From NCBI GenBank assembly GCA_950097015.1, contig CATNEN010000039.1, positions 2,046,001 to 2,110,000 on the forward strand: DNA of 64,000 bases. The letters run 5' to 3'. Source of the stretch: Macrostomum hystrix (taxonomy: Eukaryota; Animalia; Platyhelminthes). Shown here in pieces: positions 16,201 to 57,384 of this stretch; the first letter of the stretch is position 1, and each line of letters opens with the position of its first letter. The notes beneath the pieces are model-generated. The model ran no database searches. It was given only the letters and a program-made list of their open reading frames with translations, and had not been told where the DNA came from. The position numbers were made by a program, and so were the translations under genes.

Positions 16201-16410
16201 CTGCCCGCAGCCGGTGCAGGAGGTGCTGCTGCTAACGCTGCAGGCACCCTACCGGCGCGGCCAGGCCCGAACTCGGCGTTTCGTCGACTGCCTGCTGGCC
16301 GATGCTGGCGCCGGACACTGCCGGCGGTGCGGCCTTTGTTCGCGCCCAGGCTCTGAAGCGTGCACTGTAACGCTGCTTTTTCCACCTGACAGCGTATTTT
16401 GTTGGTGTTG
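13210..16410 (+). mobile_element. Decayed non-LTR retrotransposon (APE endonuclease + reverse transcriptase, RTE-like single-ORF organisation)
   Basis: APE motifs VGTLNCRTL, DVIALQEV, GDLNA, IDHVL, SDHRLL. RT motifs IIAIPKK, RGICL, EQNGFR, FIDFMKAFDSV, (G)DTLAPFLF, GYADDL, FVYLGG, VLLYNAEAWTLT. The frame is broken by stops (e.g. 13733, 15682) and several frameshifts. Ends are approximate. Confidence 0.93.
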
Positions 16411-17290: not shown

Positions 17291-20200
17291 ATGCAACTCG
17301 CGCAGCAGCTGCTGCTGCCTCTGTTGCTGCTGTCGTCCGCTGCCTCGGCGGCGCTGACACTCGGCGACAACGTGCTAGCTGGCAGCGGCGGCGTCGACGC
17401 CGGCACCATGCTGGTGGACCAGATGCAGATCGGAGAGACCTCCGATCCAATCAGCATTCGGCAGGCGTGAGTCTCTAAAGTAGCTCCGATTACTTGAGCC
17501 TTAGCCAGTCACTTGAGCCGTAGCCAGTCACTTGAGCCGTAGCCCAGTCACTTGAGCCGTAGCCCAGTCACTTGAGCCTTAGCCAGTTACTTGAGCCTTA
17601 GCCAGTTACTTGAGCCGAAGCCCAGTTACTTGAGCCGAAGCCCAGTTACTTGAGCCTTAGCCAGTTACTTGAGCCTTAGCCATTTACTTGAGCCTTAGCC
17701 AGTCACTTGAGCCGTAGCCCAGTCACTTGAGCCGTAGCCCAGTCACTTGAGCCGTAGCCCAGTCACTTGAGCCGTAGCCCAGTCACTTGAGCCGTAGCCC
17801 AGTCACTTGAGCCGTAGCCCAGTCACTTGAGCCGTAGCCCAGTCACTTGATTGCTTAGCCAATAATGCTCATCTTCTCCTGTTAGGTCGAACTCGCCCAA
17901 CCAGTGCGACTACGACTACATGGAGAATAATGAGACCTCGGCCAGCTGTGGCGACCTCACGCCCAGTTTGTCCGGCTTCAACATCGTGGCGGACTCGGTG
18001 CCTATCATGCCGGACTGCGCCAACCAAGTTGCCTCCATCCAGGTCCAGCGGACCTCCTGCTTGCGAAAGTACATTATGGACTATTCGAATCGTAAACCAA
18101 CTCCAAAGTGCAAATACTGCAGGTAATTAATTATGAAACTGGAATTATGAAAATTATCAAACGTGCATTAAGCTGAATAAAAATCTCAAGTTAGATTTGG
18201 TTACGGAGCCAACCTGAGGAAGGGAAACAGAGAAGTCGAGCTATTAGTCACATGACAACGAGACAAGTGATCCAGGTCATTTACTTGATTCGACTCTCTC
18301 TTCATTTCACCACAGGAAACAAAAGACCACTCGGCGCGGCTGCTGCCCCGGCTACCGTGGCGCTAACTGCCAGGAGGTTGTCTGCTTTGCCAAAGACGGC
18401 GGCTGCCAGAACGGAGGCCAGTGCGTCAAGCCTGATCAGTGCCAATGCAAGAGTGGCTACCTGGGCGCCATGTGCGATGAGGACACGGCGGGTGAGAATG
18501 AGAACGATGATTTTCGTATCTAACTATTGCACGAGCGTTTGCTCCTCACGCCAAGGTCCTTAAGTTCGATTCCGCGACAATGCCACATTTATTTGGGGCG
18601 CAGCCGCGGAGAGAAGGCTTGGGGGCCTGTCGTGCAATTTGCGCCCTTGAGGGCCAACCTCCAAAGCACAGTGAAGTGTAAACTACCTGACGATGAGAAA
18701 GTCAGGGCAGATGTACACACCTGTGTGAGCGTGTGCCTGCGTAAAGTATCTGTGTGCGTGCGTGCTCAGGATTCATCGGAGTGGGCAGAATTGCCTGTTC
18801 GCTGGCTCGCGGGTCTAATGTCACCAAATGACGTGCCATTGCCCGCAGCCCTCCTGCAATTAATATTATTATTTCTATTATTATCGCATGACTAACATAT
18901 TCTCCACGAGCTGATCGCTTTCCTGCTTTCTAGAGCTGCAAAAGGACACTCGCATGCGGTACTGCTTCTCTGACACTGGCTGCAAGGTCAAGAACACCAA
19001 GTTCGGCCGCAACACCGCGCCATTTTCCGACTGCTGCGCAGCAGGTGGCAACTCCTTCGGCTATTCGGGAGTCTGCACTGCGTGCACCAGCACCGCTGGC
19101 AGTGAGTATTCGAAACTTTAGTCTGTCGGATTTTAACTCAGTTCACTTGAACTCACTCAGTAGATCGAATTGCCATTGTTCTTTGCCAACTATCCCAACC
19201 TTCAGTAAGAAGCCTCGGCTCACCCACCGGTCACTCCGAGATCGTGCCATTCGACTCCTGCTCCAGCTACGGTCCGAACTCGATCTCAACCTTCGACGGT
19301 CTCACCTACGAGTTCGAGGGTCGCTGCACTTACCTGTTGGCTGGCAGCATCAACCCCAGCAGGCGCTGGTTTGTCAAGGTCACGTTGATCAACTGCGACA
19401 GGTTCAGTTCATGCCAGAAAGTGAGTGTCAAATTACCCTTGAATATTTCAAAACAGATCGGACCTAAGTTGCAACTGCCTCCGCCTTCAGGAGCTCCGTT
19501 TTCGCTTGGACGACCTGCATGAGTTTGTCGCGAACGGTCAGAATGTGCAGGTGTTCCAAATCTCTGGCCTGGACTCCAGCCAGCTACTGAAGGTCAACGA
19601 CAGCTTCCATGATCTCTTCGACGACGCCGTGGACTACAAAGGGGTCAGGTTCATTCACCGCGGCGGCTCCATCATCATGACCAGTCGCAGCCTCGGCGTC
19701 CGCCTACGCTGGAACTCGGCTGGCTCCGTCGAGTTGTCTCTAGACCGACCGGTGCATAGCAACCAAGACTTGCAGGTGAGAAGCGTTTGAGGATTATTCG
19801 TTATTCGTTGAACAGTTGCTTTGATGCTGTAACCTCTGCTGTAACCTAACCTGTGATGTATCAGACTAGGATCGACACTTGCCAAAAGTTGCAGAATCTA
19901 ACAACTAGAATATTTCCCACAGGGTCTGTGTGGCAACTACGATGGCGATAAGAGCAACGAGTTCGGCGACTTTGCCAACCCGTCGGCCTTCGGAAATTCT
20001 TGGAAGGCGCAGAATTGCCCAGACGCGGCCAACGTACCAGTGCATTGCCAGGATGCGAAGACCACGGCCAGCGCTGAGATGGAGTGTCGCCAGATTGACT
20101 CCATCTTCTTCCCGTGCCACGATCGCATTCCACCGCAAGAGTTCTTCCAGCGCTGCGTGCAGGACGTCTGCCTGGCCATTTTCAAGGGCGAGTCCACCAG

Positions 20201-23200
20201 CGGAGTCATCTGCCGCCACCTGTCTGCCTACGCGGGCTTGTGCTCACTCAGGGGCATCTGCATCGACTGGCGCTCCAGCAACCTTTGCCGTGAGTTATCT
20301 GAAGCTTCTGAATTAGACAAGCAGGTAGATGTGCACCGCTGTGCGGGCGTACTTCAAGGACTACTTACAAGACATGTACTTATATACGTAATTCCTAGTG
20401 GTCCTATGTACGTATAGCGGTGTGAAATAGTGAAACGCAGTGAAATGGCCTGAATCACGCCATCGAGCCCCTGAAAGACATTGTTTCTCAATTTTTTTCT
20501 TTAGTTATGGCTTCTTTTTTTCGCAATTTTTTTGGAATATGTTGTGACGCTGCATTTACTAGCGGAAATGATTGTTTTTGCTGCTGCTGCTAGCGGCCTG
20601 GTATTGAAAGTGTTTGCTAGGTTGATTCATCTACGTGGAAAGAAAAAGTTTTCGATTACTTTAAAGATCGCATTGTTAATTATTGCAGCCACAAACTGCT
20701 CTGAGCCCAACATGTACTGGAAGGAGTGCGCCAGCGAGTGCCCAACCACATGTGCCAACTACGACCAGGTGAAGTCCGAACTCTGCCAGGTGACCACCAG
20801 TCCCAGGTGCGAATGCGAGCCAGACTATGTGCACCACATGGGCAAGTGCATCCGCAAAATCGACTGTCCATGCAAGTACAACGGCAAGGAATTCCCGGCC
20901 GGGGGTACTTTCAACACCCAGTGCGAGAGCTGGTGAGTTTATACAGTAATTGCTGGACAATTTAAGACTACTTTATAAGACGAATATTTATACGAGCGTA
21001 CATACAAAAAGCGATTAGGCAAGCAATCAAGAAATTTAAATTTGAGCGGTTTAAACTCCCATCATTATAGCCAGTGCATCCAAGGCCGATGGAGCTGCTA
21101 CAAGCGAGCCTCCTGTCCTAAGAGCTGCCAAGTCGCGGGCACCAACATCAGGACATTCGATGGAGCCCAGGTTGAGTTCAACGGCCGCACCTGTGAGTAC
21201 GTGCTACTACAGCCGGCATCGAATGTCTCCGACAGCCGGCTGAACGTCACCATCACCCAGCGGGTGCGCACCGAGAATGTCCTTATCACCGATCCGAACC
21301 AGCTTGCCAACCTGCCTAAAAAGGTGCGAATTAATTACGGCGACTACCGAATCGAGCTCGTGTCCACATCGCTCAACTATGGCTCCAGAGCTTCGGTATT
21401 TATCAATGACGAGGACGTTACTAATAACCTGCACTTGGCAAACCTGGACCATCACCTTCTGGTCAAGCAGATCACATCAGTGACCACAATGGTGAAGATT
21501 GGTAACCATATCACCGTGTACTTCGACGGCTTTCGCAATATCGAAATCAAAGCTAACGAGCTGGTGCAGAATAATGTGAGGGCCTCGCGGGATTAATTTT
21601 TTCATAGAATCACGAGATCCTGTTTGCAGTAGAGCTTATACATTGCAAAACAACACTATTTTGTAGGTAAAGGGACTGTGTGGCAACTATGACGGTGTTA
21701 CGGCAAACGATCTGCATCCGAGAAATTCAGACATCTTCGGCTGCGTCACCGAGCTGGCTGAGTCCTACATCACCGGTGTCTGCACTGACTCGCCCATCCC
21801 ACTTCGGCAGGCCGCCTTTGCCGATCAGGTATGTTTCCGATGCCCGGGAGGGAGGGAGCAGGGACCTGGAATTCCGTGTTGCTCACGTACCGGCGGTTTA
21901 TCTCGTTAGCTCGTATAGCTAAATAGATAAACTCGTGACTGTAATCTCTCGATTGGTCCGAATCAGCGCAACACGATCTGTGACTTGTATTGAAAATTCT
22001 CAGAACACTGGCATCTACAACTCGAATTTATCAGGTGTCCGGCTCAGACCAATGCCAGATTGCCCTGCTGACTGGCGAATCCTTTAGGGCGTGCCGCGAG
22101 TCCAACAAGGTTGACCTGAACGGTCATTACCTGCGCAGCTGCCGCAAGGAGGTGGCTTCCGGCGGAGTGCAGGGCCAGCAGTTCCTGTTCTGCACCACAC
22201 TGGTGCAGGCAGCCATCGAGTGCAAGAGCCAGGGCTACGATGTTGACTTCTATCAGGACTCCGTGCTCAACCTGTGTGGTAGGTTGACACGTCGGGTGAC
22301 AGAGACGAGGGAAAATCAATACTAATACCCCACTAATACGTATTTTTTACAGCTCCACCTTGTCGTGTCGGTGGCGGTGTCTTCAGCCTGTGTGCCCGCA
22401 CCTGCCGCTCTACGTGCTCCGACTTGGCGTCCACTGAGATGTGTGAGGAAGGCTGTTTCCCTGGCTGCGACTGCCAATACGAGAGCCAATACCGCGACCA
22501 TCATGGCACCTGTGTGCGCCAGTCCGAATGCACCTGCCGGGACCGCTTCAATCCAGAAAGCATCATTTACAAGGCGGGAGATGTTTTGCAACGCAGCTGC
22601 ACCAACTGTACCTGCAATAACGGTGGCTTCGTCTGCGAGGACGACTCCTGCGAGGATAAGGTGGTTTGCCCGAAGAACCAAGTGTTCATGGATCAAGTAC
22701 CGTCCTGCCAGCGCTGTGAGGACTACAACAACTGTCCGAAGAACACCATGCTGCAGAAGCGATGCGGTTGTCCAGGAAACCAAGTGAAAAAGAGCGACGT
22801 AAGTGAAGTGGCTGAACCTGAGAATTTGTAAAAATCAAGACATGCTCCGTTCTCTCTCTTCTAATAATATTGATAATAATTGATAATAGATATATTGATA
22901 TATTGATAGTATCTGCAGGAGGGGGCTGTGGGCACTGGTACATCATGTGGTGATGGTAGACCCACAGCCTGTGAGGAATTAATTATTTTCGCCAGAAATA
23001 AATTTGGCCCCACTGAGAAATCGAGCTCAGAGAAGCAAACGAGTTAACCGCTTGGCCACTCACCGCCCCCCATTTGCACAATGGGGGGCGGTGAGTGAAA
23101 TGAAAATTGTACAAATTTTCTGTGCGATCGTAAATTCTATTCAAGAAATGGCTGGATTAATAATCTACTAAGCTGTCTCCGCTGACATATTGCATTGCAA

Positions 23201-26200
23201 ATAGCGACATGTCCGGCTTCGAATTTTGAGCTTGGTAGAGTCGATGAGGACTAGCTTTAAGGGCCGGTAATTTATCAATTTCGGTTAGGACAATTGGGGT
23301 AAAATACTCACAAATGTACCTGCGATGTTATTATATATAGTTCCTTCGACATACTTCAGGGTACATGCGTCCCAGCCAATCAATGCCCATGCAAGCTGCT
23401 CCAGAAGGAGTACCCACCAACTCACAAGTTGAAAATGGGCTGCAAAACGTTTGTTTGCGAGAAGCAGAAGTGGAAACAGGTTGGAAAGGATCGCGAATGC
23501 GAAGGTGAGTGTCACAAAATTTACCGTGGAAAGGTCAGCGTTAAGCTACGACACCTGTCCTCGATGCCGGAAAGTCACGCATAATTTTTGTGTCACTTGC
23601 AGCCGTTTGCAAGGCACAAGGCGACCCACACTACCACACCTTTGATAAGAAGAAGTACAACTTCCAAGGCAAGTGCCAGTACACTCTAGTCAGCTTCGAT
23701 GGCGACACCGCCCGGGGTCTGCCAAAGTTTCACATCTCGGCGCAGAATGTGCCCTGCGGCTCTAAGCAGGTCACTTGCACGAAGTTCATACGCATCATTA
23801 TCGGCGACGAAAGATACACGCTGGTCCGCGGTCAGGATAAGGACGAATTCCCGGCTCCATTTGCCAGCTATGGAGTCAAACTAGAGCATCTCACGGTCTA
23901 CACTCAGGTGGTGTCCGACATTCTCGGTCTGCGCATTCTGTGGGACAGGAAGACCCGGGTTCTGATCTACCTGAGATCTGACTACAAGAAGCAAGTCAGC
24001 GGTCTCTGCGGCAACTACGATGGCAACGCTGCAAATGATTTCACTTACAACAACCTACCTATGGCCAGCGTCGACGAGTGGGCGGAGAAGTACCGCACTG
24101 GCGCAGAATCCTGCCCGACGGAGGCCAGCTCTTCGAAGCGAAGCGATGGCTGGCGGGATATTTGCGAACAGGTTTGACTAAGGCCAATGCTCTTTGATAT
24201 AAAATATTTGTCTAGTGTACATTCAGTAGAAAAAATTCATGGCATGCCAACTTGTAGAATTATTGTTATTATACATTGTACTTTCATCGTTTCAAACTTT
24301 TCTACTTTCGCAGAATCCAAGCAGAAAATCATGGTCGGAGCTCACTTGTGGTGTCATCAAAAATCCGAACGGCCCATTTAAAGACTGTCTGCTGGCCCTC
24401 GATGACGAAACGGTGCAGACCTTCTATGAAAACTGCGTCTTCGATGCCTGCGGATGTGACACCGGCGGTGACTGCGAGTGCGTTTGCTCAGCCCTGGCTG
24501 GCTTCGCCGACCACTGCTCTGACGTGGGCGTCCATATCAAGTGGCGAAGCATGGACAGCTGCCGTGAGTGTCGCTTGCTGCTTTGTGTGTGCTATGATTA
24601 AAACCAGAGTCCTAAAATATAGCCAATGAACTGTGCCAACCGCTGCTTTCAGCTCTTATGTGTGACGGAGGCAAGCGCTACATGCCTTGCATGAATCCGT
24701 GCCCCCAGAACTGCCGGAACCTCGGAGACGAGCCGGCACCGCACTGCCAGAACGCGGCATGCACTGAGGGCTGCGGCTGCCCAGAAGGCACCGTGGATCA
24801 GAACGGAGAGTGTGTTCCCATCAGCGTGTGTCCATGCGTACACAATGGTACCGAGTACCAGCATGGCAGGGTATATTTCGACGAGGTCACTTGCAGAGAG
24901 TGTACATGCGGTTCTAACGGCAGGTTTAGTTGCAAAGTGAAGCTGGACGCTTGTAAGGTGAAGCCTAAGTGCGAGGATGAGAGCAACTTCCAGTGCTCAA
25001 ACGGCGCCTGCATTCCTCGCGAGCAGGTTTGCGATCGCAAGTTTGACTGCATTGACCGGAGCGACGAGAAGGACTGCAGTGAGTTACAGGGTGGGCTTGA
25101 AAAATGGGTATAGGACTCGCGGAACACAGCTCGACAAGCGCTTGTCTATTAAGTTAATAGTAGAAATATGCTACCCTCAACATTTTCCTCTCAATTACAG
25201 CGCCAATCAACACCACGTGTTCAGTAGCGTTCTTCCAGTGCCAGCGAGACGGAAACTGCATTCCAGAATCAAAGAGATGCGACGGTGTTTCCCACTGCTC
25301 GGATGGAAGTGACGAGTTTGACTGTCGTGAGTGCCATGAGTGCATCTTTGTAACTCCTCTTTTAAGTAGCTGCATAAAAAACTGAAACATAAAAATAAAC
25401 CGAATGACCATAATTGCAGAGAAATGCACAGACTCTTTGTACTATCTGTGCCCCCTGAGTGGCCAGTGCATTCACAGAAGACAACTATGTGATGGGCGCA
25501 TGGACTGTGGCTTCAACGATAACTCAGACGAGAGTGACTGCAAAGGTTAGAAGAACATGGTTTAGTTTTGGCCATTTTACTCGTAGTATGCTGACTTCTA
25601 GGGGGTCGGTGGCAGAGCGGTTAACGCGTCTGCCTCTCGAACCACGGTCCCAAAGTTCGATTCCACGGCGAGGCCACATTCATTTGGGGCGCAGCCGCGG
25701 AGAGAAGGCTTGGGTGCTTGTCGTGCAATTTACGCCCTTGATGGCCAACCCCCAAGGCACAGTGAAGTGTAAACTACCTGACGATGAGAAAGTCAGGGCA
25801 GATGTACACACCTGTGTGAGCGTATGCCTGCGTACAGTATCTGTGTGCGTGTGTACTTATGTGAGTAACACTTATGTGAGTATTTGCGCAACTTTGGGCA
25901 TTGTAAAGGGTAGCATTGTAAATGCTAATTGTAAAGGGTAAAGCTCTTTTCGAAATAAGCATCAGGAATTTTAGAAAAAAGTTTTAATCAGAAAAAGGTG
26001 TAATAGTTATTGCCAATGTGAGGCGGTCAAAAAGACTAGCCTACTGCATGCATTTTTATGTTTTATTTTACACAAAACCAATTGCAGAGTGCGACCAGGG
26101 TGCTGAGTTCCGCTGCGGCTCCACAATAGATAAGCCCGGCCCGTGCATTCCGCTCAGAAAACGGTGCGACGGTCACGATGACTGCGGAGATGGAAGCGAT

Positions 26201-44200: not shown

Positions 44201-47200
44201 GGAACTGGGTCTTCAAGTACTCCACCAACAACGAGTGGAACTGGGTCTTCAAGTACAACAACTGGAACTAGTGTAACAGAGTCTTCAAGTACTACACCTG
44301 CAACCAGTGGACCACCAGGATCTTCAAGTACTACACCTGCAACCAGTGGAACTGGGTCTTCAAGTACTACAACTGGAACCAGTGTAACAGAATCTTCAAG
44401 TACTACAGCTGGAACCAGTGAAACAGAATCTTCGAGTACTACAACTGGAACCAGTGTAACAGAATCTTCAAGTACTACACCTGCAACCAGTGGACCACCA
44501 GGATCTTCAAGTACTACAACTGGAACCAGTGTAACAGAATCTTCAAGTACTACACCTGCAACCAGTGGACCACCAGGATCTTCAAGTACAACAACTGGAA
44601 CCAGAGTAACAGAATCTTCAAGTACTACACCTGCAACCAGTGGACCACCAGGATCTTCAAGTACTCCACAATCAACCAGTGGAACTGAGTCTTCAAGTAC
44701 TACAACAGAAACCAGCGGAACTGGGTCTTCAAATACTCCACCAACAACGAGTGGAACTGGGTCTTCAAGTACAACAACTGGAAGTAGTGTAACAGAGTCT
44801 TCAAGTACTACACCTGCAACCAGTGGAACTGGGTCTTCAAGTACTACACCTGCAACCAGTGGAACTGGGTCTTCAAGTACTACAACTGGAACCAGTGTAA
44901 CAGAATCTTCAAGTACTACACCTGCAACCAGTGGACCACCAGGATCTTCAAGTACTACAACTGGAACCAGTGTAACAGAATCTTCAAGTACTACACCTGC
45001 AACCAGTGGACCACCAGGATCTTCAAGTACAACAACTGGAACCAGAGTAACAGAATCTTCAAGTACTACACCTGCAACCAGTGGACCACCAGGATCTTCA
45101 AGTACTCCACAATCAACCAGTGGAACTGAGTCTTCAAGTACTACAACAGAAACCAGCGGAACTGGGTCTTCAAATACTCCACCAACAACGAGTGGAACTG
45201 GGTCTTCAAGTACAACAACTGGAACTAGTGTAACAGAGTCTTCAAGTACTACACCTGCAACCAGAGGAACTGAGTCTTCAAGTACAACAACTGGAAGTAG
45301 TGTAACAGAGTCTTCAAGTACTACACCTGCAACCAGTGGAACTGGGTCTTCAAGTACTACAACTGGAACCAGTGTAACAGAATCTTCAAGTACTACACCT
45401 GCAACCAGTAGACCACCAGGATCTTCAAGTACTACAACTGGAACCAGTGTAACAGAATCTTCAAGTACTACACCTGCAACCAGTGGACCACCAGGAACTT
45501 CAAGTACTACAACTGGAACCAGAGTAACAGAATCTTCAAGTACTACACCTGCAACCAGTGGACCACCAGGATCTTCAAGTACTCCACCATCAACCAGTGG
45601 AACTGAGTCTTCAAGTACTACAACAGAAACCAGCGGAACTGGGTCTTCAAATACTCCACCAACAACGAGTGGAACTGGGTCTTCAAGTACAACAACTGGA
45701 ACTAGTGTAACAGAGTCTTCAAGTACTACACCTGCAACCAGTGGAACTGAGTCTTCAAGTACTACAACAGAAACCAGCGGAACTGGGTCTTCAAGTACTA
45801 CACCTGCAACCAGAGGAACTGAGTCTTCAAGTACAACAACTGGAACTAGTGTAACAGAGTCTTCAAGTACTACACCTGCAACCAGTGGAACTGGGTCTTC
45901 AAGTACTACACCTGCAACCAGTGGAACTGGGTCTTCAAGTACTACAACTGGAACCAGTGTAACAGAATCGTCAAGTACTACACCTGCAACCAGAGGAACT
46001 GAGTCTTCAAGTACAACAACTGGAAGTAGTGTAACAGAGTCTTCAAGTACTACACCTGCAACCAGTGTAACAGAGTCTTCAAGTACTACACCTGCAACCA
46101 GTGGAACTGAGTCTTCAAGTACTACAACAGAAACCAGCGGAACTGGGTCTTCAAGTACTACACCTGCAACCAGAGGAACTGAGTCTTCAAGTACAACAAC
46201 TGGAACTAGTGTAACAGAGTCTTCAAGTACTACACCTGCAACCAGTGGAACTGGGTCTTCAAGTACTACACCTGCAACCAGTGGAACTGGGTCTTCAAGT
46301 ACTACAACTGGAACCAGTGTAACAGAATCGTCAAGTACTACACCTGCAACCAGAGGAACTGAGTCTTCAAGTACAACAACTGGAAGTAGTGTAACAGAGT
46401 CTTCAAGTACTACACCTGCAACCAGTGGAACTGGGTCTTCAAGTACTACACCTGCAACCAGTGGAACTGGGTCTTCAAGTACAACAACTGGAACCAGTGT
46501 AACAGGATCTTCAAGTACTACAACTGGAATCAGTGTAACAGAATCTTCAAGTACTACACCTGCAACCAGTGGACCACCAGGATCTTCAAGTACTACAACT
46601 GGAACCAGAGAAACAGAATCTTCAAGTACTACACCTGCAACCAGTGGACCACCAGGATCTTCAAGTACTCCACCATCAACCAGTGGAACTGAGTCTTCAA
46701 GTACTACAACAGAAACCAGCGGAACTGGGTCTTCAAATACTCCACCAACAACGAGTGGAACTGGGTCTTCAAGTACAACAACTGGAACTAGTGTAACAGA
46801 GTCTTCAAGTACTACACCTGCAACCAGTGGAACTGAGTCTTCAAGTACAACAACTGGAACTAGTGTAACAGAGTCTTCAAGTACTACACCTGCAACCAGT
46901 GGAACTGGGTCTTCAAGTACTACAACTGGAACCAGTGTAACAGAATCTTCAAGTACTACACCTGCAACCAGTGGAACTGGGTCTTCAAGTACTACACCTG
47001 CAACCAGTGGAACTGGGTCTTCAAGTACTACAACTGGAACCAGTGTAACAGAATCTTCAAGTACTACACCTGCAACCAGTGGACCACCAGGATCTTCAAG
47101 TACTACAACTGGAACCAGTGTAACAGAATCTTCAAGTACTACACCTGCAACCAGTGGACCACCAGGATCTTCAAGTACTACAACTGGAACCAGAGTAACA

Positions 47201-50200
47201 GAATCTTCAAGTACTACACCTGCAACCAGTGGACCACCAGGATCTTCAAGTACTCCACCATCAACCAGTGGAACTGAGTCTTCAAGTACTACAACAGAAA
47301 CCAGCGGAACTGGGTCTTCAAATACTCCACCAACAACGAGTGGAACTGGGTCTTCAAGTACAACAACTGGAACTAGTGTAACAGAGTCTTCAAGTACTAC
47401 ACCTGCAACCAGTGGAACTGGGTCTTCAAGTACTACAACTGGAACCAGTGTAACAGAATCTTCAAGTACTACACCTGCAACCAGTGGACCACCAGGATCT
47501 TCAAGTACAACAACTGGAACCAGTGTAACAGAATCTTCAAGTACTACACCTGCAACCAGTGGACCACCAGGATCTTCAAGTACTACAACTGGAACCAGTG
47601 TAACAGAATCTTCAAGTACTACACCTGCAACCAGTGGACCACCAGGATCTTCAAGTACTCCACCATCAACCAGTGGAACTGAGTCTTCAAGTACTACAAC
47701 AGAAACTAGCGGAACTGGGTCTTCAAGTACTCCACCAACAACGAGTGGAACTGGGTCTTCAAGTACAACAACTGGAACTAGTGTAACAGAGTCTTCAAGT
47801 ACTACACCTGCAACCAGTGGAACTGAGTCTTCAAGTACAACAACTGGAACTAGTGTAACAGAGTCTTCAAGTACTACACCTGCAACCAGTGGAACTGGGT
47901 CTTCAAGTACTACACCTGCAACCAGTGGAACTGGGTCTTCAAGTACTACAACTGGAACCAGTGTAACAGAATCTTCAAGTACTACACCTGCAACCAGTGG
48001 ACCACCAGGATCTTCAAGTACTACAACTGGAACCAGTGTAACAGAATCTTCAAGTACTACACCTGCAACCAGTGGACCACCAGGATCTTCAAGTACTACA
48101 ACTGGAACCAGTGTAACAGAATCTTCAAGTACTACACCTGCAACCAGTGGACCACCAGGATCTTCAAGTACTCCACCATCAACCAGTGGAACTGAGTCTT
48201 CAAGTACTACAACAGAAACCAGCGGAACTGGGTCTTCAAGTACTCCACCAACAACGAGTGGAACTGGGTCTTCAAGTACAACAACTGGAACTAGTGTAAC
48301 AGAGTCTTCAAGTACTACACCTGCAACCAGAGGAACTGAGTCTTCAAGTACAACAACTGGAAGTAGTGTAACAGAGTCTTCAAGTACTACACCTGCAACC
48401 AGTGGAACTGGGTCTTCAAGTACTACATCTTCAAGTACTACACCTGCAACCAGTGGACCACCAGGATCTTCAAGTACTACAACTGGAACCAGTGTAACAG
48501 AATCTTCAAGTACTACACCTGCAACCAGTGGACCACCAGGATCTTCAAGTACTACAACTGGAACCAGAGTAACAGAATCTTCAAGTACTACACCTGCAAC
48601 CAGTGGACCACCAGGATCTTCAAGTACTCCACCATCAACCAGTGGAACTGAGTCTTCAAGTACTACAACAGAAACCAGCGGAACTGGGTCTTCAAATACT
48701 CCACCAACAACGAGTGGAACTGGGTCTTCAAGTACAACAACTGGAACTAGTGTAACAGAGTCTTCAAGTACTACACCTGCAACCAGTGGAACTGAGTCTT
48801 CAAGTACAACAACTGGAACTAGTGAAACAGAGTCTTCAAGTACTACACCTGCAACCAGTGGAACTGGGTCTTCAAGTACTACAACTGGAACCAGTGTAAC
48901 AGAATCTTCAAGTACTACACCTGCAACCAGTGGACCACCAGGATCTTCAAGTACAACAACTGGAACCAGTGTAACAGAATCTTCAAGTACTACACCTGCA
49001 ACCAGTGGACCACCAGGATCTTCAAGTACAACAACTGGAACCAGTGTAACAGAATCTTCAAGTACTACACCTGCAACCAGTGGACCACCAGGATCTTCAA
49101 GTACTACAACTGGAACCAGTGTAACAGAATCTTCAAGTACTACACCTGCAATCAGTGGACCACCAGGATCTTCAAGTACTCCACCATCAACCAGTGGAAC
49201 TGAGTCTTCAAGTACTACAACAGAAACTAGCGGAACTGGGTCTTCAAGTACTCCACCAACAACGAGTGGAACTGGGTCTTCAAGTACAACAACTGGAACT
49301 AGTGTAACAGAGTCTTCAAGTACTACAAATGCAACCAGTGGAACTGAGTCTTCAAGTACAACAACTGGAACTAGTGTAACAGAGTCTTCAAGTACTACAC
49401 CTGCAACCAGTGGAACTGGGTCTTCAAGTACTACACCTGCAACCAGTGGAACTGGGTCTTCAAGTACTACAACTGGAACCAGTGTAACAGAATCTTCAAG
49501 TACTACACCTGCAACCAGTGGACCACCAGGATCTTCAAGTACAACAACTGGAACCAGTGTAACAGAATCTTCAAGTACTACACCTGCAACCAGTGGACCA
49601 CCAGGATCTTCAAGTACTACAACTGGAACCAGTGTAACAGAATCTTCAAGTACTACACCTGCAACCAGTGGACCACCAGGATCTTCAAGTACTACAACTG
49701 GAACCAGTGTAACAGAATCTTCAAGTACTACACCTGCAACCAGTGGACCACCAGGATCTTCAAGTACAACAACTGGAACCAGTGGAACTGAGTCTTTAAG
49801 TACTTCAACAGAAACCAGTGAAACAGAATCTTCAAGTACTACACCCTCAAGTTCTTCACCAGGAACCAGCGGAACTGAATCAACAGGCACAACGCCAGTA
49901 TCTTTTAGTACTCAGACACAACCAACAGTTAGTCCGACTGGCGGTGAGACGCAACCACCTCCAGCAGGTATGTTGAAGTTGTGCAATTTTCTTGAGCCCC
50001 CTTTTTTAATAAATTGATGTGGTTTGTCGTAACCTTTTTAGAATACTGCGAAGTTAGTCTTACTACCTTTTCTAAAGCGCTCAACACAACGGTTGCTTCA
50101 CTGAGACGATTTTACGTGGAGTTGGATGGTGTCGATGGCTTGACCAGGCCAGATGAAGAAATTCATGAATACTCTGCGGTCGAGTCTAGCGTCATTGTAC

Positions 50201-53200
50201 GCTTTGACTGTGGAACGTGCACTTGCCAAGATGATGGGTCGTTTGTATTCCAGCGAATTAGTTGCTCTCTTGACTGTAGGCTCACCAGCTGGTCTGAGTG
50301 GAGCTCCTGCTCCGCCACCTGTGGTCCTGGAGCACGAAAGAGAACTCGTGAAATTCTGGCTCCAGCTGGACCTGGCGGCAAAGATTGCCAGCCGAGCGAT
50401 TTTAGTGAATATGAAGCATGTCAGACAGCTGACTGCCCTTGTATAGTCAATCAGTGGAGTGAATGGAGTTCGTGTAGCAAGAGCTGTGATGGAGGCCTGC
50501 GCAGCAGAACAAGAGCAACAAGTGGAAACTGCACAGATGGTTCTGGGATGGAGTCACAGTCATCCAGCTGTGGCTCTGCTCCATGTTCATCGCCATCAAC
50601 TTGCGTAGAACCTAAACAGTTGCAGCCCTGTGCCAATGTAAGCTGCCCTCTCACCTGCGACCATGTGTCTGGCGCCAGTGCCTGCTCTGAAAGTTATGAC
50701 TGCGATAGTAGCGGCAACGGCTGCTTCTGCCCAAGCGGAACTGTGTGGGACCAAGTGAATGACAAATGCGTAAGTCCATCTAATTGTCCATGCAACTTGG
50801 AGGTTGTGAACTGCCTATCTTGCTCCGAGAAGGTATGCGTCGATGGTGTCGGTCAGTGCGTCCCAAGTGCTAACTGCGACTGCCAGTGGGCTGAGTGGCA
50901 ACCGTGGCAGCCTTGCTCCGTTGAGTGCGGTGGCGGCATGCAGACTCGTCAACGAGATTACAGTGTCCAACGCCGTGGGAGCGGAGCGGCGTGCCAGGGT
51001 AACAGCACCCAGTCGCAGCCCTGCAATTCACAGATTTGCCCAATCTGTTTCGACGAGATCGCTTATTGGTACAAGGCCGGTGAGCGCATGCCGTCAGACT
51101 CTATATGCGAGGAGTGCTTCTGCGACTACACCACTGCCGAACGAAAGTGTATTCGCCTGCCAGATTCAGAACTGCCACTGCCAGCGTGGACTAGCTGGAC
51201 GCAGTGGACAGACTGTACTGGAAGTTGCGGCAGCCAGACGCGTGAAAGACAGCGCTTGTGCTACAAGGCCTGCATGAATGACACCCGAACTTGCGCCCCA
51301 GACAGCAGTGGTGAGTTTCGTAGTTTCTAACATGGATTTTTTTATATAAAACTTTGGGAGCCAAAAACAAAAGTAGCAACATGCATATTGCATCGATTCC
51401 AGGAACAACAAATCGTCAGACAGAAACATGTGGCACTACTAACCCAGCGGACTGTAATCCTCCCATAGACTGCAAGGTGTCCACTGAGTGGCAGAATACC
51501 ACTTGCACAGCACAGTGTGACGGTCTAAGTGGAGTAGTCTATGGCCAAATGGAGCAGACACTTACGATACTGGTGCAGCCGCAGTACGGCGGTGAGGCAT
51601 GTCCGCAAACCAAGCGCATCGTTCCATGTAGCCTCAAATGCAACGTCGATTGTGTAGCTAGTAACTGGCAGGCTTGGAGTGCCTGTACAGTTAACTGCGA
51701 TGCAGGTTCTGTCTGCGACACAACCTGTGGCAGCGGACTTCGAACACGAACTCGATCAGTGACGGTTGAGGCTCAAAATGATGGCAAGCCATGTGTCACT
51801 CAGGAAAACGGGCCCTGCATAGTACCATGTGTCAATGAAACTTGCTCGTCTCCACTAGTAAAATCCTATTGCGCCAACCGGTGTGAACTGCGGTGCAGTG
51901 ACCTTGCCAGTACAGAGGTGTGTACAGAAGTAGCCTGCGAAGTTGGCTGCGCGTGCCCTAATAACACCTACATGCAGGACGGCAAATGCGTCAGCAAGAG
52001 CGACTGCTTCTGTGCTTGGAATACCGCACTTCTGGGACCGATGCCTGACACTATTCAAAATGGCCGAGCACCTCCAGGCTATATTGTTTCAAAGGACTGC
52101 AACGAGTGCACATGCAGCAATGGAGCCTGGCAGTGTACTAACAAGGACTGCAAGAAGGACTGCATTTACTCAGATTGGTCCAGCGACGGTGTTTGCGACG
52201 TGCCCTGCGGATCAGGTAAGAAGCTGACGCGGCGAACTATTCTGCAACAGGCCCAATACGGCGGTGTGGAATGCACAGAGCCGCTCGAGAAGTTTGAAGA
52301 CTGCTTTGGAGATGAGGGCAAGTGTTGCGACCCAAATACGCTATACTATGAGTCGAAAACATGCGATCAGACCTGTGCCGGTGTAATCGGCGGTTCTTCG
52401 ACTCCAAGCAACTGCACAGTGGGCTGCCACTGCTCTCCGGGCTTTGTTCGTGATAACAATGGCAACTGCGTGCAAGTGGAGGACTGCTACAAGTGCAAAG
52501 TTAACGGCGTTGAATATCCTAACGGCTATAGCTTCGATGACATGGACGCCTGTATCCACCGAACCTGCCTACAAGGCAACTACACAGAGAAGCTCATAGG
52601 TGTGGATGCAATGCCATCTTGTACTAACTTGGACGGCAGTTTGGACGCCACTGTAATCGAGGCCTACAGGACAGCCAACTACAGCCGGTGCTGCTTTAGC
52701 GTCGCCCTACCCAGTTGCACAAAACTGAACATTTCAATAGATACAATTTTCACACCAGACGGATACGTGTGCGAACTAGAAACGCCACTGGAAGGCTCGC
52801 GTTGTGAAGGAACCTGCCCTAGCAACTGCATAGTTACACCGGATGTCTATAACAGCTATGTGAGTTTTATTTACTGCAGTTTAGTGAAAATTTTCGGGAG
52901 TAAAACTGTTAGGGCATTCAGGTGTTCCAGGAATTTAATTAGTTTGACAAAATCATCCATAATCAGGCACTAGAGCGCAAGCCCAATATTTGTCAACATG
53001 CATGTCCTTGCAGACTGAGGCCGAGGTGAACTACATCATAGAGCAGCACGCGGCTCTCACGGGTCAGGCCGTGTCCACCCTTTGCGGCTGCTGCCACCCA
53101 ACTCGAGAGTCTACGAATGCACCTGTTGAGGTCAGTTGCAAGAATCTGCCTGGCAGGAGCTTTGTGGTCAACGTCCATCATGTCGCTGGCTGCACCTGCG

Positions 53201-53223
53201 ACCCGACCATCGCCGGAACCTGA
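17291..53223 (+). CDS. Giant secreted SCO-spondin/hemolectin/mucin-like glycoprotein, ~10,361 aa, 25 exons: 17291-17466, 17886-18122, 18316-18491, 18934-19101, 19206-19420, 19491-19775, 19923-20289, 20689-20932, 21071-21575, 21667-21828, 22035-22278, 22353-22798, 23360-23504, 23603-24171, 24314-24563, 24653-25078, 25201-25326, 25420-25545, 26088-26213, 26661-26752, 26827-33811, 33888-49967, 50042-51310, 51403-52859, 53014-53223
   Basis: All 24 introns are GT-AG with compatible phases, and exon lengths sum to 31,086 nt. Motifs: signal peptide [21 protein letters not shown]; EMI-like CCPGY; EGF CQNGGQC..PDQCQC..GY.G..C; three VWD (TFDG/TFD...GLCGNYDG) with C8 and TIL; LDLa (C.DGSDE); TSP1 ([10 protein letters not shown]); cystine knot (CEGTCPS...CGCCHP...CTC). 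An alternative in-frame ATG lies at 17258. Confidence 0.9.
17490..17862. repeat. 19-20-bp minisatellite (CAGTCACTTGAGCCGTAGCC) filling intron 1 of the giant gene
   Basis: About 19 tandem units between the donor at 17467 and the acceptor at 17885. Confidence 0.95.
18530..18770 (+). mobile_element. tRNA-derived SINE copy (5'-truncated) in intron 3
   Basis: Closely similar to 25600-25855 (shared TTTGGGGCGCAGCCGCGGAGAGAAGGCTTGGG...CTGACGATGAGAAAGTCAGGGCAGATGTACACACC); B box GTTCGATTCC. Confidence 0.8.
23005..23072 (-). mobile_element. Degenerate tRNA-derived SINE head in intron 12
   Basis: Minus strand reads GGGGGCGGTGAGTGGCCAAGCGGTTAAC...GCTCGATTTC, resembling the head of the SINE at 25600. 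Confidence 0.45.
25600..25855 (+). mobile_element. tRNA-derived SINE in intron 18
   Basis: A box TGGCAGAGCGG, B box GTTCGATTCC, ~170-bp body shared with 18530-18770, TG-rich tail. Confidence 0.82.
27781..33171 (+). repeat. Coding 654-bp (218-aa) tandem repeat, ~8.2 near-identical copies, within exon 21
   Basis: ORF track entries recur at exact 654-bp intervals (28050, 28704, 29358 ... 32628). The protein copies appear identical. Confidence 0.97.
34945..35665 (+). repeat. Coding 120-bp (40-aa) acidic Thr/Glu/Pro repeat x~6 ([40 protein letters not shown])
   Basis: Visible 120-bp period in DNA and translation. Confidence 0.95.
36281..40690 (+). repeat. Coding 36-bp (12-aa) mucin PTS repeat [11 protein letters not shown][T/S], ~122 units
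   Basis: Uninterrupted in-frame tandem array in exon 22. Confidence 0.97.
41230..49850 (+). repeat. Coding 36-bp (12-aa) Ser/Thr-rich repeat (SSTT[TG/PA]TS[GTE/VTE/GPPG/GTG]S), ~239 units
   Basis: Uninterrupted in-frame tandem array in exon 22, built from a small vocabulary of unit variants. Confidence 0.97.
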
Positions 53224-53453
53224 ACGGCTTCGTAGCCGATCATTGAAGAGACTGAAATTGATAGCGAATGAGGGAACTTCCGCGGGATCGGACCCGCCGT
53301 CATCGCAGCTAATAGTCTGTCATTTCGCCCAAAAAAGCTTTTTGACCAGAACCAGATTAATAATTTTATGGTGGTGGTGTGGAAATCTCTGCATCCGCTT
53401 CTGAAAGATGCTATTTTGGCGGTACAAAAATCTTTATTTTAAACTCTCGACAC

Positions 53454-57223: not shown

Positions 57224-57384
57224 GATGGGAGCTGTGGAATGGCGACCGTTTCAGAAAGCCATTAACTGAAGCACGAGCGCCACTTCAGAGCCTCGGATTC
57301 CACAGCTTAATTAGATAAATACCGAAGGGATTGAAAGGACTGGCAGTTCCCGGCGGACTTTAAGGATGCATATGGTAAGATATT

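What the first reader, a model, noticed from the sequence alone, without database searches (positions are those of the whole stretch)
17291..53223. A complete ~10,400-aa secreted protein fusing SCO-spondin-type ends with a lectin-like tandem array and a giant mucin core: candidate glue or mucus scaffold
Seen: the many short ORFs join through 24 phase-compatible GT-AG introns into one 31,086-nt reading frame. Established: EMI-VWD-C8-TIL-LDLa-F5/8C-TSP1-CTCK is the SCO-spondin domain order, and VWD + PTS + CTCK defines gel-forming mucins. Inference: this protein combines both, replacing the single F5/8C with 15 related modules and adding >4,500 aa of PTS repeats, with no C-terminal D4 domain. 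From memory, to be verified: the Macrostomum adhesive protein ap2 is a giant VWD/C8/TIL/TSP1 protein with central repeats of 200+ aa, and sea-star Sfp1 combines VWD and discoidin domains. This gene may be a relative of those glue proteins or an undescribed gland secretion (mucus, rhabdite, cement). Automated annotation would probably fragment it.
Basis: partly seen in the sequence, partly recalled or inferred. Interest (0 to 1): 0.9.

Follow-up and report, generated by a model that had tools for sequence, protein, structure and literature searches.

The report
Giant flatworm mucin, paralogue of glue ap2
This is a real, expressed 25-exon gene of the flatworm Macrostomum hystrix for a secreted protein of about 10,400 residues: a sugar-carrying mucin string with 15 lectin-fold beads, between ends like those of SCO-spondin; it is an acidic, unstudied sister of the known flatworm glue protein ap2, not a new kind of gene.

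Summary
On the + strand, 25 exons (17291-53223) join through 24 GT..AG introns, all phase-compatible. One spliced RNA contig with no mismatches confirms 12 introns, including the join between the LDLa exons and the module array. The introns at 33.8 and 50.0 kb rest on sequence and on conserved paralogue structure.

Domains found: signal peptide, EGF, 3x VWD-C8-TIL, 5 LDLa, 15 Cys-bracketed modules of about 145 aa, about 5,100 aa of Pro/Thr/Ser repeats, about 8 TSP1, TIL. There is no D4. The modules miss Pfam F5/8C but fold as a discoidin/CBM32 sandwich. EMI and CTCK are seen only as motifs.

The genome matches the M. hystrix assembly (220 Mb, 42 contigs). The M. lignano orthologue exists only as fragmentary "VWFD domain-containing protein" entries.

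The gene belongs to a family of at least four giant paralogues here, including the glue gene ap2 on contig 25. ap2 has the same plan but is polycationic (pI about 11); this protein is acidic (pI about 4.5). A limpet "mucin-2-like" protein shares the N-terminal half of the plan (VWD x3, LDLa x5, modules with linkers).

The most likely role is a disulfide-polymerised mucus or gel scaffold; the gland is unknown. The scan had already noted this stretch and its paralogues on other contigs.

The parts
17291..17466 (+). Exon 1: start codon and signal peptide ([22 protein letters not shown]...). An in-frame upstream ATG lies at 17258.
   Evidence: The length of the RNA contig upstream of exon 9 fits exons 1-8 plus a 62-nt leader.
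17886..19101 (+). Exons 2-4: Cys-rich N-terminal region. It has a CCPGY.G..C motif (EMI-like, not confirmed) followed by one EGF domain.
   Evidence: Pfam finds EGF_2, E 1.6e-5, in exon 3 and no EMI hit. Exon borders come from the model only.
19161..20932 (+). Exons 5-8: first VWD-C8-TIL assembly.
   Evidence: Pfam: VWD start E 3.4e-8, C8 E 3.5e-16, TIL E 3.8e-7. The M. lignano orthologue aligns from exon 7 onward.
21071..22798 (+). Exons 9-12: second VWD-C8-TIL assembly.
   Evidence: Pfam: VWD E 6e-12, C8 E 2e-5, TIL E 7e-8. Introns 9-11 are in RNA contig X5.
23360..24831 (+). Exons 13-16 (5' part): third VWD-C8-TIL assembly.
   Evidence: Pfam: VWD E 1.3e-31, C8 E 6e-17, TIL E 2.6e-9. Introns 12-15 are in the RNA contig.
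24967..26850 (+). Five LDL-receptor class A domains (end of exon 16, exons 17, 18 and 19, and exon 20 plus the start of exon 21). The fifth is split by intron 20 (26753-26826).
   Evidence: Pfam Ldl_recept_a, E 3.5e-9 to 7.6e-6, for the first three. The fourth and fifth are read from the translation. Introns 16-20 are in the RNA contig, and intron 20 also in run X2.
26827..33811 (+). Exon 21 (6,985 nt): modules M1-M11 with Pro/Thr/Ser linkers, then a short Cys-rich tail.
28111..33342 (+). Homogenised array of eight 654-nt (218-aa) units: a 152-aa Cys-to-Cys module plus a 66-aa linker. All eight modules are identical as protein. The first seven whole units differ by 0-2 nt.
33888..49967 (+). 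Exon 22 (16,080 nt): modules M12-M15 at 33965-34390, 34445-34873, 35828-36256 and 40775-41203, plus the mucin core.
34950..35664 (+). Six copies of a 40-aa acidic Thr/Glu/Pro repeat.
   Evidence: TRF: period 120, 96% matches. Translation.
36281..40683 (+). PTS array 1: about 122 copies of the 12-aa unit [12 protein letters not shown].
   Evidence: TRF: period 36, 122 copies, 92% matches. Composition P 32%, S 25%, T 23%.
41225..49843 (+). PTS array 2: about 235 copies of the 12-aa unit [12 protein letters not shown].
   Evidence: TRF: period 36, 235 copies. Composition T 35%, S 32%.
50042..51310 (+). Exon 23: four TSP1 repeats and a TIL-like Cys-rich stretch.
   Evidence: Pfam: TSP1_spondin E 6e-28, TSP_1 E 1e-25, 4 stretches. 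Intron 22 is read from sequence.
51403..52859 (+). Exon 24: TSP1 repeats, two TIL domains, and the start of a cystine-knot-like end (CEGTCPS).
   Evidence: Pfam: TSP1_spondin E 2.8e-15, TIL E 2.9e-11. Motif. Matches paralogues at 37-41% identity.
53014..53223 (+). Exon 25: end of the cystine-knot-like domain (CGCCHP...C...CTC) and the TGA stop at 53221-53223.
   Evidence: No Pfam or PDB sequence hit.

Best explanation
The locus is one gene of Macrostomum hystrix. It encodes a secreted glycoprotein of about 10,400 residues that forms disulfide-linked polymers.

Shown here:
- The exon structure. Twelve of the 24 introns are confirmed by RNA, including the link between the N-terminal domains and the module array.
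- The domain content.
- The predicted discoidin/CBM32-like fold of the 15 Cys-bracketed modules.
- The mucin-type composition: 38% Ser+Thr and 10% Pro overall.
- The acidic charge.
- Membership of a family of giant paralogues that includes the glue protein ap2.

Inferred from what is established for von Willebrand factor and gel-forming mucins:
- The C-terminal cystine-knot-like end makes tail-to-tail dimers.
- The three N-terminal VWD-C8-TIL assemblies link these dimers head-to-head in the secretory pathway.
- The roughly 5,100 residues of Pro/Thr/Ser repeats are densely O-glycosylated and hold water.
- The discoidin-fold beads interrupt the glycan brush. They play the part that CysD domains play in MUC2 and MUC5AC, giving non-covalent cross-links, possibly by binding Gal/GalNAc-type glycans of neighbouring chains or surfaces.

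The central region is anionic (pI 4.3-4.7), whereas ap2 is polycationic (pI about 11) and sits at another locus. The most likely role is therefore a mucus or gel scaffold of a gland secretion (gliding, pharyngeal or other mucus) rather than the tail glue. Which gland makes it is not known.
For: Gene structure:
- 25 exons and 24 GT..AG introns, all phase-compatible.
- A spliced 6,233-nt RNA contig with 0 mismatches spans exons 9-21.
- An LDLa domain is split across intron 20. The paralogues on contigs 7 and 1 begin their giant exon with the same DGTDEQ.C.
- Run X5 holds 89% of the sampled words of 49850-53400. About 91% of that stretch is exonic, so this is close to what exon-only coverage would give.

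Domains.

Modules:
- 15 copies; the only invariant residues are the first and last Cys.
- AlphaFold model: pLDDT 76.9, pTM 0.77.
- Foldseek: E 6.6e-6 to APC10/DOC, and about 1e-5 to neuropilin b1, factor VIII C2 and CBM32.
- VIA: Z 11.6 to CBM32, 10.5 to the DDR1 discoidin domain.

Family:
- Only 19 hits among 1.84 billion representatives. They include two M. lignano VWFD proteins and Patella vulgata mucin-2-like, which has VWD x3, LDLa x5 and the same modules with PTS linkers.
- Paralogues in this genome share the VWD and C-terminal exons at 37-56% identity.
- ap2 on contig 25 has 243- and 214-aa units, each a Cys-bracketed module plus linker. The module profiles align at hhalign E 4.2e-5, and the ap2 module has the same top fold match, Z 9.4.

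Charge contrast.

Published analogues: ap2 is one mRNA, O-glycosylated and secreted (PMC6410801). Limpet pedal mucus contains SCO-spondin-like P-vulgata_3 and P-vulgata_6 (PMC7333891).
Against: - No read evidence for introns 21-24 or for exons 1-8.
- Copy numbers in near-identical arrays of a long-read assembly may be wrong, so the length is approximate.
- EMI and the cystine knot are not detected by any profile. The joined protein was not searched, so domains split by introns stay untested.
I recall that motif from memory only, so N-terminal multimerisation is an analogy.
- The modules do not match Pfam F5_F8_type_C, and nothing shows that they bind sugar.
- There are no data on tissue, glycosylation or phenotype.
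- An acidic mucin could still be part of an adhesive or egg-cement system.
Confidence: 0.7

Rival explanations
1. The protein is a component of an attachment system: a partner of ap1/ap2 in the adhesive organs, or the glue of cement or shell glands. It would not be general mucus. The anionic mucin would pair electrostatically with polycationic ap1/ap2.
For: - It has the same architecture as ap2 and a related C-terminus.
- Discoidin arrays occur in echinoderm adhesives Nectin and Sfp1 (PMC7037938).
- The limpet homologue family is found in adhesive pedal mucus (PMC7333891).
Against: - Double knockdown of ap1 and ap2 removes the adhesive vesicles in M. lignano, and these two are described as the major glue components (PMC8621496, PMC6410801).
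- No expression data place this gene in the tail.
Confidence: 0.22
2. The locus holds two or more genes, for example an N-terminal VWD/LDLa/module gene, a separate mucin and a separate TSP1 gene. The continuous reading frame would then be a coincidence of phase.
For: Introns 21 and 22 have no read support here (one search covered only 21050-27040). Contigs from short reads cannot cross the repeats.
Against: - Both giant exons lack a start and a signal peptide of their own, and open directly at acceptor sites.
- Modules of one family lie on both sides of intron 21.
- Introns 21 and 22 are canonical, 76 and 74 nt long, and both phase 1.
- The only ATG near the start of the TSP1 frame lies inside intron 22.
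- Three paralogues and ap2 keep the same order, a giant exon followed by TSP1/TIL exons within a few hundred bases.
- ap2 was shown to be one mRNA (PMC6410801).
Confidence: 0.05
3. The gene is the flatworm counterpart of SCO-spondin in function as well. It would be a fibre-forming protein of the nervous system or of ciliated ducts, not a gland mucin.
For: The domain order of the ends is that of SCO-spondin, and the limpet relative's best vertebrate match is SCO-spondin (PMC7333891).
Against: - About 5,100 residues of PTS repeats are absent from SCO-spondin.
- There are four or more paralogues, one of which is a proven glue.
- There are only about 8 TSP1 repeats, against the numerous copies in SCO-spondin.
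- No Reissner-fibre-like structure is known to me in flatworms (from memory).
Confidence: 0.03

Closest known systems
Macrostomum adhesion protein 2 (Mlig-ap2 and Mhtx-ap2; Wunderer et al. 2019, PMC6410801; PMC8621496)
   Same: - Same genus, and a paralogue in the same genome (contig 25).
[quoted passage not shown]
- A giant central exon of tandem units of about 214-243 aa, each a Cys-bracketed module of about 150 aa plus a Thr-rich linker.
- TIL/TSP1 exons at the C-terminus, 40% identical over residues 22-220 of exon 24.
- The module has the same best fold match (CBM32, 4a42).
   Different: - Not the orthologue. ap2 epitope peptides are absent, and the M. lignano orthologue is A0A1I8IQU4.
- The central region is acidic (pI 4.3-4.7) instead of polycationic (pI 10-11.5).
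- It carries about 4,500 aa of pure 12-aa PTS arrays that the ap2 stretch read here (contig 25) does not show.
- Sequence similarity between the modules is marginal (hhalign probability 70%).
- There are no functional data.
SCO-spondin (SSPO) of chordates
   Same: The same order: an N-terminal Cys-rich/EGF region, three VWD-C8-TIL assemblies, an LDLa cluster, a discoidin-fold domain, TSP1 repeats mixed with TIL, and a cystine-knot-like end.
   Different: - Fifteen divergent discoidin-fold modules instead of one F5/8C domain.
- A huge PTS core.
- About 8 TSP1 repeats, not about 25.
- EMI not detected.
- Orthology was not tested by a tree.
Gel-forming mucins (MUC2, MUC5AC, MUC5B, MUC6) and insect hemolectin/hemocytin
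   Same: Three N-terminal D assemblies, long PTS domains interrupted by small globular Cys-containing domains, and a C-terminal knot-like end. Hemolectin also carries discoidin domains (from memory).
   Different: No D4 and no VWC domains. LDLa and TSP1 domains are present. The beads have a discoidin fold, not CysD.
Patella vulgata mucin-2-like XP_055959230.1, and pedal-mucus proteins P-vulgata_3 and P-vulgata_6 (Kang et al. 2020, PMC7333891)
   Same: VWD x3, C8, TIL and LDLa x5, followed by the same Cys-bracketed modules with PTS linkers (profile hit). P-vulgata_3 is SCO-spondin-like and expressed in the pedal sole. P-vulgata_6 has TSP1 x4 and a cystine knot.
   Different: - A different phylum.
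- 24-44% identity in the shared domains.
- Extra LDLa domains sit between the limpet modules.
- Identity of XP_055959230.1 with P-vulgata_3 is assumed, not shown.
Echinoderm adhesive proteins Nectin (six discoidin domains) and Sfp1 (discoidin plus VWD)
   Same: Tandem discoidin-type domains in secreted adhesive or cohesive proteins. Sfp1 also has VWD and C8 (PMC7037938).
   Different: Those are canonical F5/8C domains, with no PTS core and a different overall order. There is no evidence of common descent beyond shared domains.

Membership tests
Gel-forming mucin (VWD x3, PTS, cystine knot) | Three N-terminal VWD-C8-TIL assemblies | tested here: met
   Pfam VWD, C8 and TIL, three times each, in exons 5-16.
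Gel-forming mucin (VWD x3, PTS, cystine knot) | Long Pro/Thr/Ser-rich tandem-repeat domain | tested here: met
   Arrays of 1,560 and 2,929 aa with 80% or more P+S+T.
Gel-forming mucin (VWD x3, PTS, cystine knot) | C-terminal D4 and VWC domains | tested here: not met
   Exons 23-25 give only TSP1 and TIL, with no VWD or VWC.
Gel-forming mucin (VWD x3, PTS, cystine knot) | C-terminal cystine-knot domain | tested here: inconclusive
   No Pfam or PDB sequence hit on the two exon pieces. The motif CEGTCPS ... CGCCHP ... C ... CTC is present, and the paralogue on contig 1 has CAGACPS. The domain is split by intron 24 and the joined sequence was not searched.
SCO-spondin | N-terminal EMI domain | tested here: inconclusive
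   No EMI hit even at E up to 10 on exons 2 and 3 taken apart. Only the CCPGY.G..C motif at the start of exon 3 is seen. The domain would be split by intron 2.
SCO-spondin | LDLa cluster after the third D assembly, with a discoidin (F5/8C) domain next to it | tested here: met
   Five LDLa domains are directly followed by discoidin-fold modules. The discoidin is matched by fold, not by the Pfam profile.
SCO-spondin | Long C-terminal series of TSP1 repeats alternating with TIL (SCOR), about 25 TSP1 | tested here: inconclusive
   The alternation is present, but there are only about 8 TSP1 and 2-3 TIL.
SCO-spondin | Orthology in a VWD-domain tree | not tested
   No reference SSPO, mucin or VWF sequences could be brought in by reference. 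The one broad search was dominated by FCGBP and zonadhesin, which score high because of their many VWD copies.
Macrostomum ap2 | VWD/C8/TIL and LDLa at the N-terminus, tandem central repeats of more than 200 aa, TIL/TSP1 at the C-terminus | tested here: met
   Compared with ap2 of this genome.
Macrostomum ap2 | Orthology with Mlig-ap2 (RP-1/RP-2 repeats, antibody epitopes, polycationic repeats) | tested here: not met
   Epitope peptides are absent from all six frames. The ap2 orthologue lies at contig 25, about 7.25-7.30 Mb. pI is 4.3-4.7 here against 10-11.5 for ap2. The M. lignano orthologue is A0A1I8IQU4.
Macrostomum ap2 | Expression in tail adhesive glands; loss of attachment after RNAi | not testable with these tools
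   Needs in situ hybridisation and RNAi.
F5/8 type C (discoidin) domain, Pfam PF00754 | Match to the family profile | tested here: not met
   No F5_F8_type_C hit in exon 21 or exon 22, nor in the contig-15 paralogue at E up to 0.1.
F5/8 type C (discoidin) domain, Pfam PF00754 | Galactose-binding-domain-like beta sandwich of about 150 aa | tested here: met
   Model pLDDT 76.9, pTM 0.77. Foldseek E about 1e-5 to factor VIII C2, neuropilin b1, DDR2 and CBM32. VIA Z 9-11.6 over 120-138 residues.
F5/8 type C (discoidin) domain, Pfam PF00754 | Cys at both ends of the domain (N-to-C disulfide of animal discoidin domains) | tested here: met
   The first and last Cys are the only invariant columns across the 8 distinct modules. 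The disulfide itself is inferred.
F5/8 type C (discoidin) domain, Pfam PF00754 | Ligand (sugar or lipid) binding by the loop spikes | not testable with these tools
   Needs recombinant modules and glycan arrays.

The most novel reading that the evidence does not exclude
The flatworm genes (this one, its paralogues and ap2) and the limpet pedal-mucus protein are the spiralian co-orthologues of chordate SCO-spondin. On this reading the Reissner-fibre protein descends from an ancestral bilaterian secreted mucus or glue scaffold. The single F5/8C domain of SCO-spondin would be the remnant, or the seed, of a lectin bead that in spiralians was amplified into arrays. Those arrays would gel the protein by binding its own O-glycans.
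Probability: 0.25. Interest if true: 0.7.

Novelty: new variant of a known kind. Interest (0 to 1): 0.45.

Why it matters
This gives the first essentially full-length model of an acidic sister of the flatworm glue protein ap2. Together with the paralogues, it shows that ap2 is one member of a family of "discoidin beads on a mucin string" proteins with SCO-spondin-type ends, and that a limpet mucin-2-like protein shares the design.

For bioadhesion research it offers a natural contrast within one genome: the same scaffold in a cationic glue version and an anionic mucus version. That could show which features make a secretion sticky.

For mucin evolution it adds a lineage in which CysD-like spacing is done by a lectin fold, and D4/VWC is replaced by TSP1/TIL.

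The repeat array is homogenised within the species: all eight modules are identical as protein, and seven of the eight whole units differ by 0-2 nt. Against M. lignano it is only about 59% identical, while the N-terminal domains are about 88% identical. This is a clear case of concerted, fast repeat evolution.

Tried and rejected
Searches that gave nothing useful:
- Pfam hits in exon 21 (PH_Tiam1, p55_CTD, DUF6406 and others) have no single significant stretch and come from summing the eight identical copies. I rejected them.
- A weak DUF3039 hit in exon 25 is below cut-off.
- Pfam at E up to 10 on single exons found no EMI or cystine knot.
- A PDB sequence search of exon 25 found nothing.
- The ESM Atlas search of a module gave scores of 0.77 or less, so no lead.
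- The broad protein search with the N-terminal 1,260 residues of the M. lignano orthologue returned mainly FCGBP and zonadhesin, which score high because of their many VWD copies. It says nothing about orthology.
- Papers: no hit for the orthologue's identifiers.

Model corrections:
- My first dynamic-programming model contained a false exon (25757-25937, inside a SINE and GT-rich repeat) and three wrong borders. The RNA joints corrected them.

Weak or rejected readings:
- A single ap2 RP-2 module against the module profile is not significant (E 0.011, probability 4%). Only the profile-profile comparison is suggestive.
- The idea that the window gene is ap2 itself was rejected.
- The long antisense ORFs (for example 41161-49890 on the minus strand, 2,909 aa) are by-products of stop-free repeats.

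- The spliced protein was never joined or sent to any tool. A whole-protein domain scan, a signal-peptide predictor and a fold of the split EMI and cystine-knot regions were therefore not done.

Full report
WHAT IS THERE

The + strand between 17.2 and 53.3 kb carries two extremely long open frames: 26761-33816 (2,352 codons) and 33875-50014 (5,380 codons). Chains of short coding ORFs lie before and after them.

Pfam was run on each piece separately, by reference. The pieces give, in order:
- an EGF domain;
- three sets of VWD, C8 and TIL;
- LDL-receptor class A domains;
- nothing credible in the two giant frames;
- TSP1 repeats (four stretches in each of two exons) and two TIL domains.

No VWD or VWC follows the repeats.

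THE GENE MODEL

I built a chain of exons with a small coding/splice dynamic programme. I then laid four public runs on 21050-27040, the one read-laying run allowed.

Run X5 contains a 6,233-nt contig with no mismatch to the window. It skips twelve stretches that all begin GT and end AG. Intronic bins have depth 0, so the run holds spliced RNA. The joints corrected my model in four places:
- exon 16 ends at 25078;
- exon 17 ends at 25326;
- exon 19 starts at 26088;
- the "exon" at 25757-25937 is false.

The contig crosses the 74-nt intron 26753-26826, which splits the fifth LDLa domain (...CDKNLDCE | DGTDELC...). It then continues 770 nt into the module array, up to where the identical repeats begin. 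This is the junction that ties the SCO-spondin-like N-terminus to the array. Run X2 shows the same joint.

Upstream of exon 9 the contig has 2,032 more bases. Modelled exons 1-8 from the ATG at 17291 sum to 1,970, leaving a 62-nt leader. That fits the model but does not prove each border.

The four remaining introns were read from the sequence:
- 33812-33887 (gtaagt...ttttag);
- 49968-50041 (gtatgt...ttttag);
- 51311-51402;
- 52860-53013.

The whole model has 25 exons and 24 GT..AG introns. Every phase matches, and there is no stop inside an exon frame or at a junction codon. It totals 31,188 nt with the stop, or 10,395 aa. I checked phases and junction codons one by one.

Exon 1 encodes a typical signal peptide. 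An in-frame ATG at 17258 would add 11 residues.

THE CENTRE

Exon 21 holds eleven stretches of 137-152 aa that begin and end with Cys, and exon 22 holds four more. They are separated by Pro/Thr/Ser linkers.

Eight of these stretches are identical as protein. They sit in 654-nt units, seven of which differ by 0-2 nt. The others are 11-26% identical to them. The exceptions are M2, which is 65% identical to them, and M14 and M15, which are 56% identical to each other.

Exon 22 further carries:
- six 40-aa acidic repeats;
- about 122 copies of [12 protein letters not shown];
- about 235 copies of [12 protein letters not shown].

These PTS stretches measure 1,560 and 2,929 aa. Overall the protein is 19% Ser, 19% Thr, 10% Pro and 2.9% Cys.

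WHAT THE MODULES ARE

Pfam does not recognise them. An AlphaFold model of the common module, built on an alignment of the eight distinct copies, gave pLDDT 76.9 and pTM 0.77. It is a beta sandwich.
- Foldseek against the PDB gave 186 matches at E 0.001 or better. The best were APC10/DOC, neuropilin b1, factor V/VIII C2, DDR2 discoidin and CBM32 modules, with E about 1e-5 and TM 0.5-0.6.
- The independent VIA search gave Z 11.6 (CBM32), 10.5 (DDR1 discoidin) and 10.5 (neuropilin) over 120-138 residues.

The only invariant columns are the first and last Cys, which is the position of the N-to-C disulfide of animal discoidin domains. The modules are therefore discoidin / galactose-binding-domain-like by fold. 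They are not members of Pfam F5_F8_type_C by sequence, and sugar binding is not shown.

WHERE IT COMES FROM AND WHO ITS RELATIVES ARE

A profile of the modules found only 19 proteins at E 0.001 or better among 1.84 billion representatives. Those that match a whole module include:
- Macrostomum lignano PAA71036.1 and A0A1I8IQU4 ("VWFD domain-containing protein", 5,222 aa, partial, with an out-of-frame tail);
- M. lignano A0A1I8GJ02 (1,680 aa: VWD, C8, TIL, LDLa, then modules);
- Patella vulgata mucin-2-like XP_055959230.1 (4,007 aa: VWD x3, C8, TIL, LDLa x5, then the same modules with PTS linkers);
- a Seison protein.

A0A1I8IQU4 aligns to the window exon by exon. Identity is about 88% in the N-terminal domains but only 59% across the array. 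It is therefore the orthologue from another species.

The window's assembly has 220,453,370 bases in 42 contigs. That matches the M. hystrix assembly of Wiberg et al. 2023 (about 220 Mb, 42 contigs; PMC10468722).

Searches within that genome and reading of the loci show a family:
- **Contig 7, 4.85-4.89 Mb.** This is the orthologue of A0A1I8GJ02, with a 5,426-aa exon.
- **Contig 1, 18.405-18.434 Mb.** It has a 7,027-aa exon.
- **Contig 15.** This is a further mucin with similar modules.
- **Contig 25, about 7.25-7.30 Mb.** It has 19 units of 243 aa and about 30 units of 214 aa. It carries a peptide (VNKVTPRPGSALRP) resembling the Mlig-ap2 epitope VNRETPKEPKKALS. This is the ap2 glue gene.

The contig 7 and contig 1 genes open their giant exon with DGTDEQ.C, the same split LDLa as here. 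In all four genes the giant exon is followed within a few hundred bases by TSP1/TIL exons that match exon 24 at 37-41% identity.

RELATION TO ap2

The published descriptions of ap2 fit the plan seen here (PMC6410801, PMC8621496). They report VWD/C8/TIL and LDL domains at the N-terminus, two central repeat motifs of more than 200 aa, and TIL/TSP-1 at the C-terminus; M. hystrix has a third VWD-TIL-C8. The present gene is not ap2, for three reasons:
- The four antibody epitopes are absent.
- ap2 lies elsewhere in the genome.
- The M. lignano orthologue is a different protein.

Each ap2 unit is a Cys-bracketed module of 147-153 aa plus a Thr-rich linker. A single ap2 module does not match the window profile significantly. 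Profile against profile gives probability 70% and E 4.2e-5 over 81 columns. A model of the RP-2 module (pLDDT 71) has the same best structural match, 4a42 CBM32, at Z 9.4. This agrees with earlier notes of this scan (s1-405157, s1-262272), which I used as leads and re-tested.

The chemistry differs sharply. ap2 units have pI 10-11.5 and 15-22% Lys+Arg, whereas the units and giant exons of the window gene have pI 4.3-4.7.

HOW IT MOST LIKELY WORKS

The mechanism is an analogy with VWF and gel-forming mucins. It is established knowledge for those proteins and inferred here.
- The cystine-knot-like end would dimerise the chains. That end is seen only as the motif CEGTCPS ... CGCCHP ... CTC.
- The three D assemblies would multimerise the dimers.
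- The PTS arrays would carry dense O-glycans.
- The discoidin-fold beads would space and cross-link the brush.

An anionic, heavily glycosylated polymer of this kind is a mucus or gel scaffold. I rate the tail-glue role as less likely, because ap1 and ap2 account for the adhesive vesicles (PMC8621496). A role in another adhesive or cement secretion cannot be excluded.

Limpet pedal mucus contains SCO-spondin-like P-vulgata_3 (vWFD x3, LDLa x5, expressed in the pedal sole) and P-vulgata_6 (TSP1 x4 plus a cystine knot, similar to ap2) (PMC7333891). These are probably pieces of the same kind of protein. Echinoderm adhesives use tandem discoidin domains (PMC7037938).

NOVELTY

The gene is real and nearly complete, but it is one of several like it. 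Its closest characterised relative, ap2, is known, and the design has been noted by this scan on other contigs. What is new:
- the full structure of this paralogue;
- its mucin core and acidic charge;
- the conserved limpet counterpart.

I rate it a new variant of a known kind, of moderate interest.

LIMITS

- Only one 6-kb stretch could be laid with reads.
- Repeat copy numbers depend on the assembly.
- EMI and the cystine knot, both split by introns, could not be tested, because joined sequence was not to be searched.
- No tree against SCO-spondin and mucins could be built.
- There is no information on tissue or phenotype.

Noticed in passing
window 25600-25860 (intron 18) and 18520-18790 (intron 3): There are two copies of a high-copy element. 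Its head looks tRNA-like (GGGGGTCGGTGGCAGAGCGGTTAAC...GTTCGATTCCACGGCGAGGCCA), so it is probably a tRNA-derived SINE. The summed contig depth in run X5 is about 3,400 against 12 for the gene. ARAGORN calls no tRNA. A further copy lies in the contig 7 paralogue locus.
   Followed up: partly
window 28111-33342 compared with M. lignano A0A1I8IQU4: The repeat array shows concerted evolution. All eight modules are identical as protein, and seven of the eight whole units differ by 0-2 nt within M. hystrix. The M. lignano orthologue has its own set of identical 219-aa units. Between the species the array is only about 59% identical, while the N-terminal domains are about 88% identical.
   Followed up: partly
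G000 contig 25, about 7,251,600-7,288,750 (loci L019-L023): The ap2 orthologue's repeat region is broken into three overlapping open frames (7,537, 1,513 and 3,372 aa). The breaks fall at the same spot of the RP-2 unit (...EKLPEKKE / PESRNCQRRRR...). This looks like single-base length differences in an A/G-rich run, which could be assembly errors or real frameshifts.
   Followed up: no
G000 contig 7:4,849,800-4,886,500 (-), contig 1:18,405,500-18,434,300 (+), contig 15:1,570,000-1,593,600 (-): There are three more giant mucin-type genes with Cys-bracketed modules and Thr-rich strings. The contig 7 and contig 1 genes share the VWD/LDLa start, the split-LDLa intron and the TSP1/TIL end with the window gene. 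The contig 15 modules look closer to canonical discoidin (C.W.DGM...).
   Followed up: partly
window 2226-2975 (+): An ORF resembles a carbohydrate sulfotransferase (...VVREPVSRMLSDYAQ...), 14 kb upstream of the mucin gene. It was identified by eye only, with no profile search.
   Followed up: no
window 13256-16235 (+): A non-LTR retrotransposon (endonuclease and reverse-transcriptase-like ORFs) lies just upstream of the gene's first exon. It marks the 5' boundary of the locus.
   Followed up: no
window 1-1100, 4330-5170, 5510-6300, 7720-8900, 9640-11900, 57300-58250: There are long C/T-rich or short-period simple repeats with strong strand skew (GC skew down to -0.68). They produce spurious ORFs in several frames.
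   Followed up: no
window 56714-57223 (-) and 61181-61966 (-): Downstream genes lie on the opposite strand. One begins like a CAF1/PARN-type ribonuclease (MEVTRQSFESVLPEILDS...FVAIDGEYTGI). This was judged by eye only.
   Followed up: no
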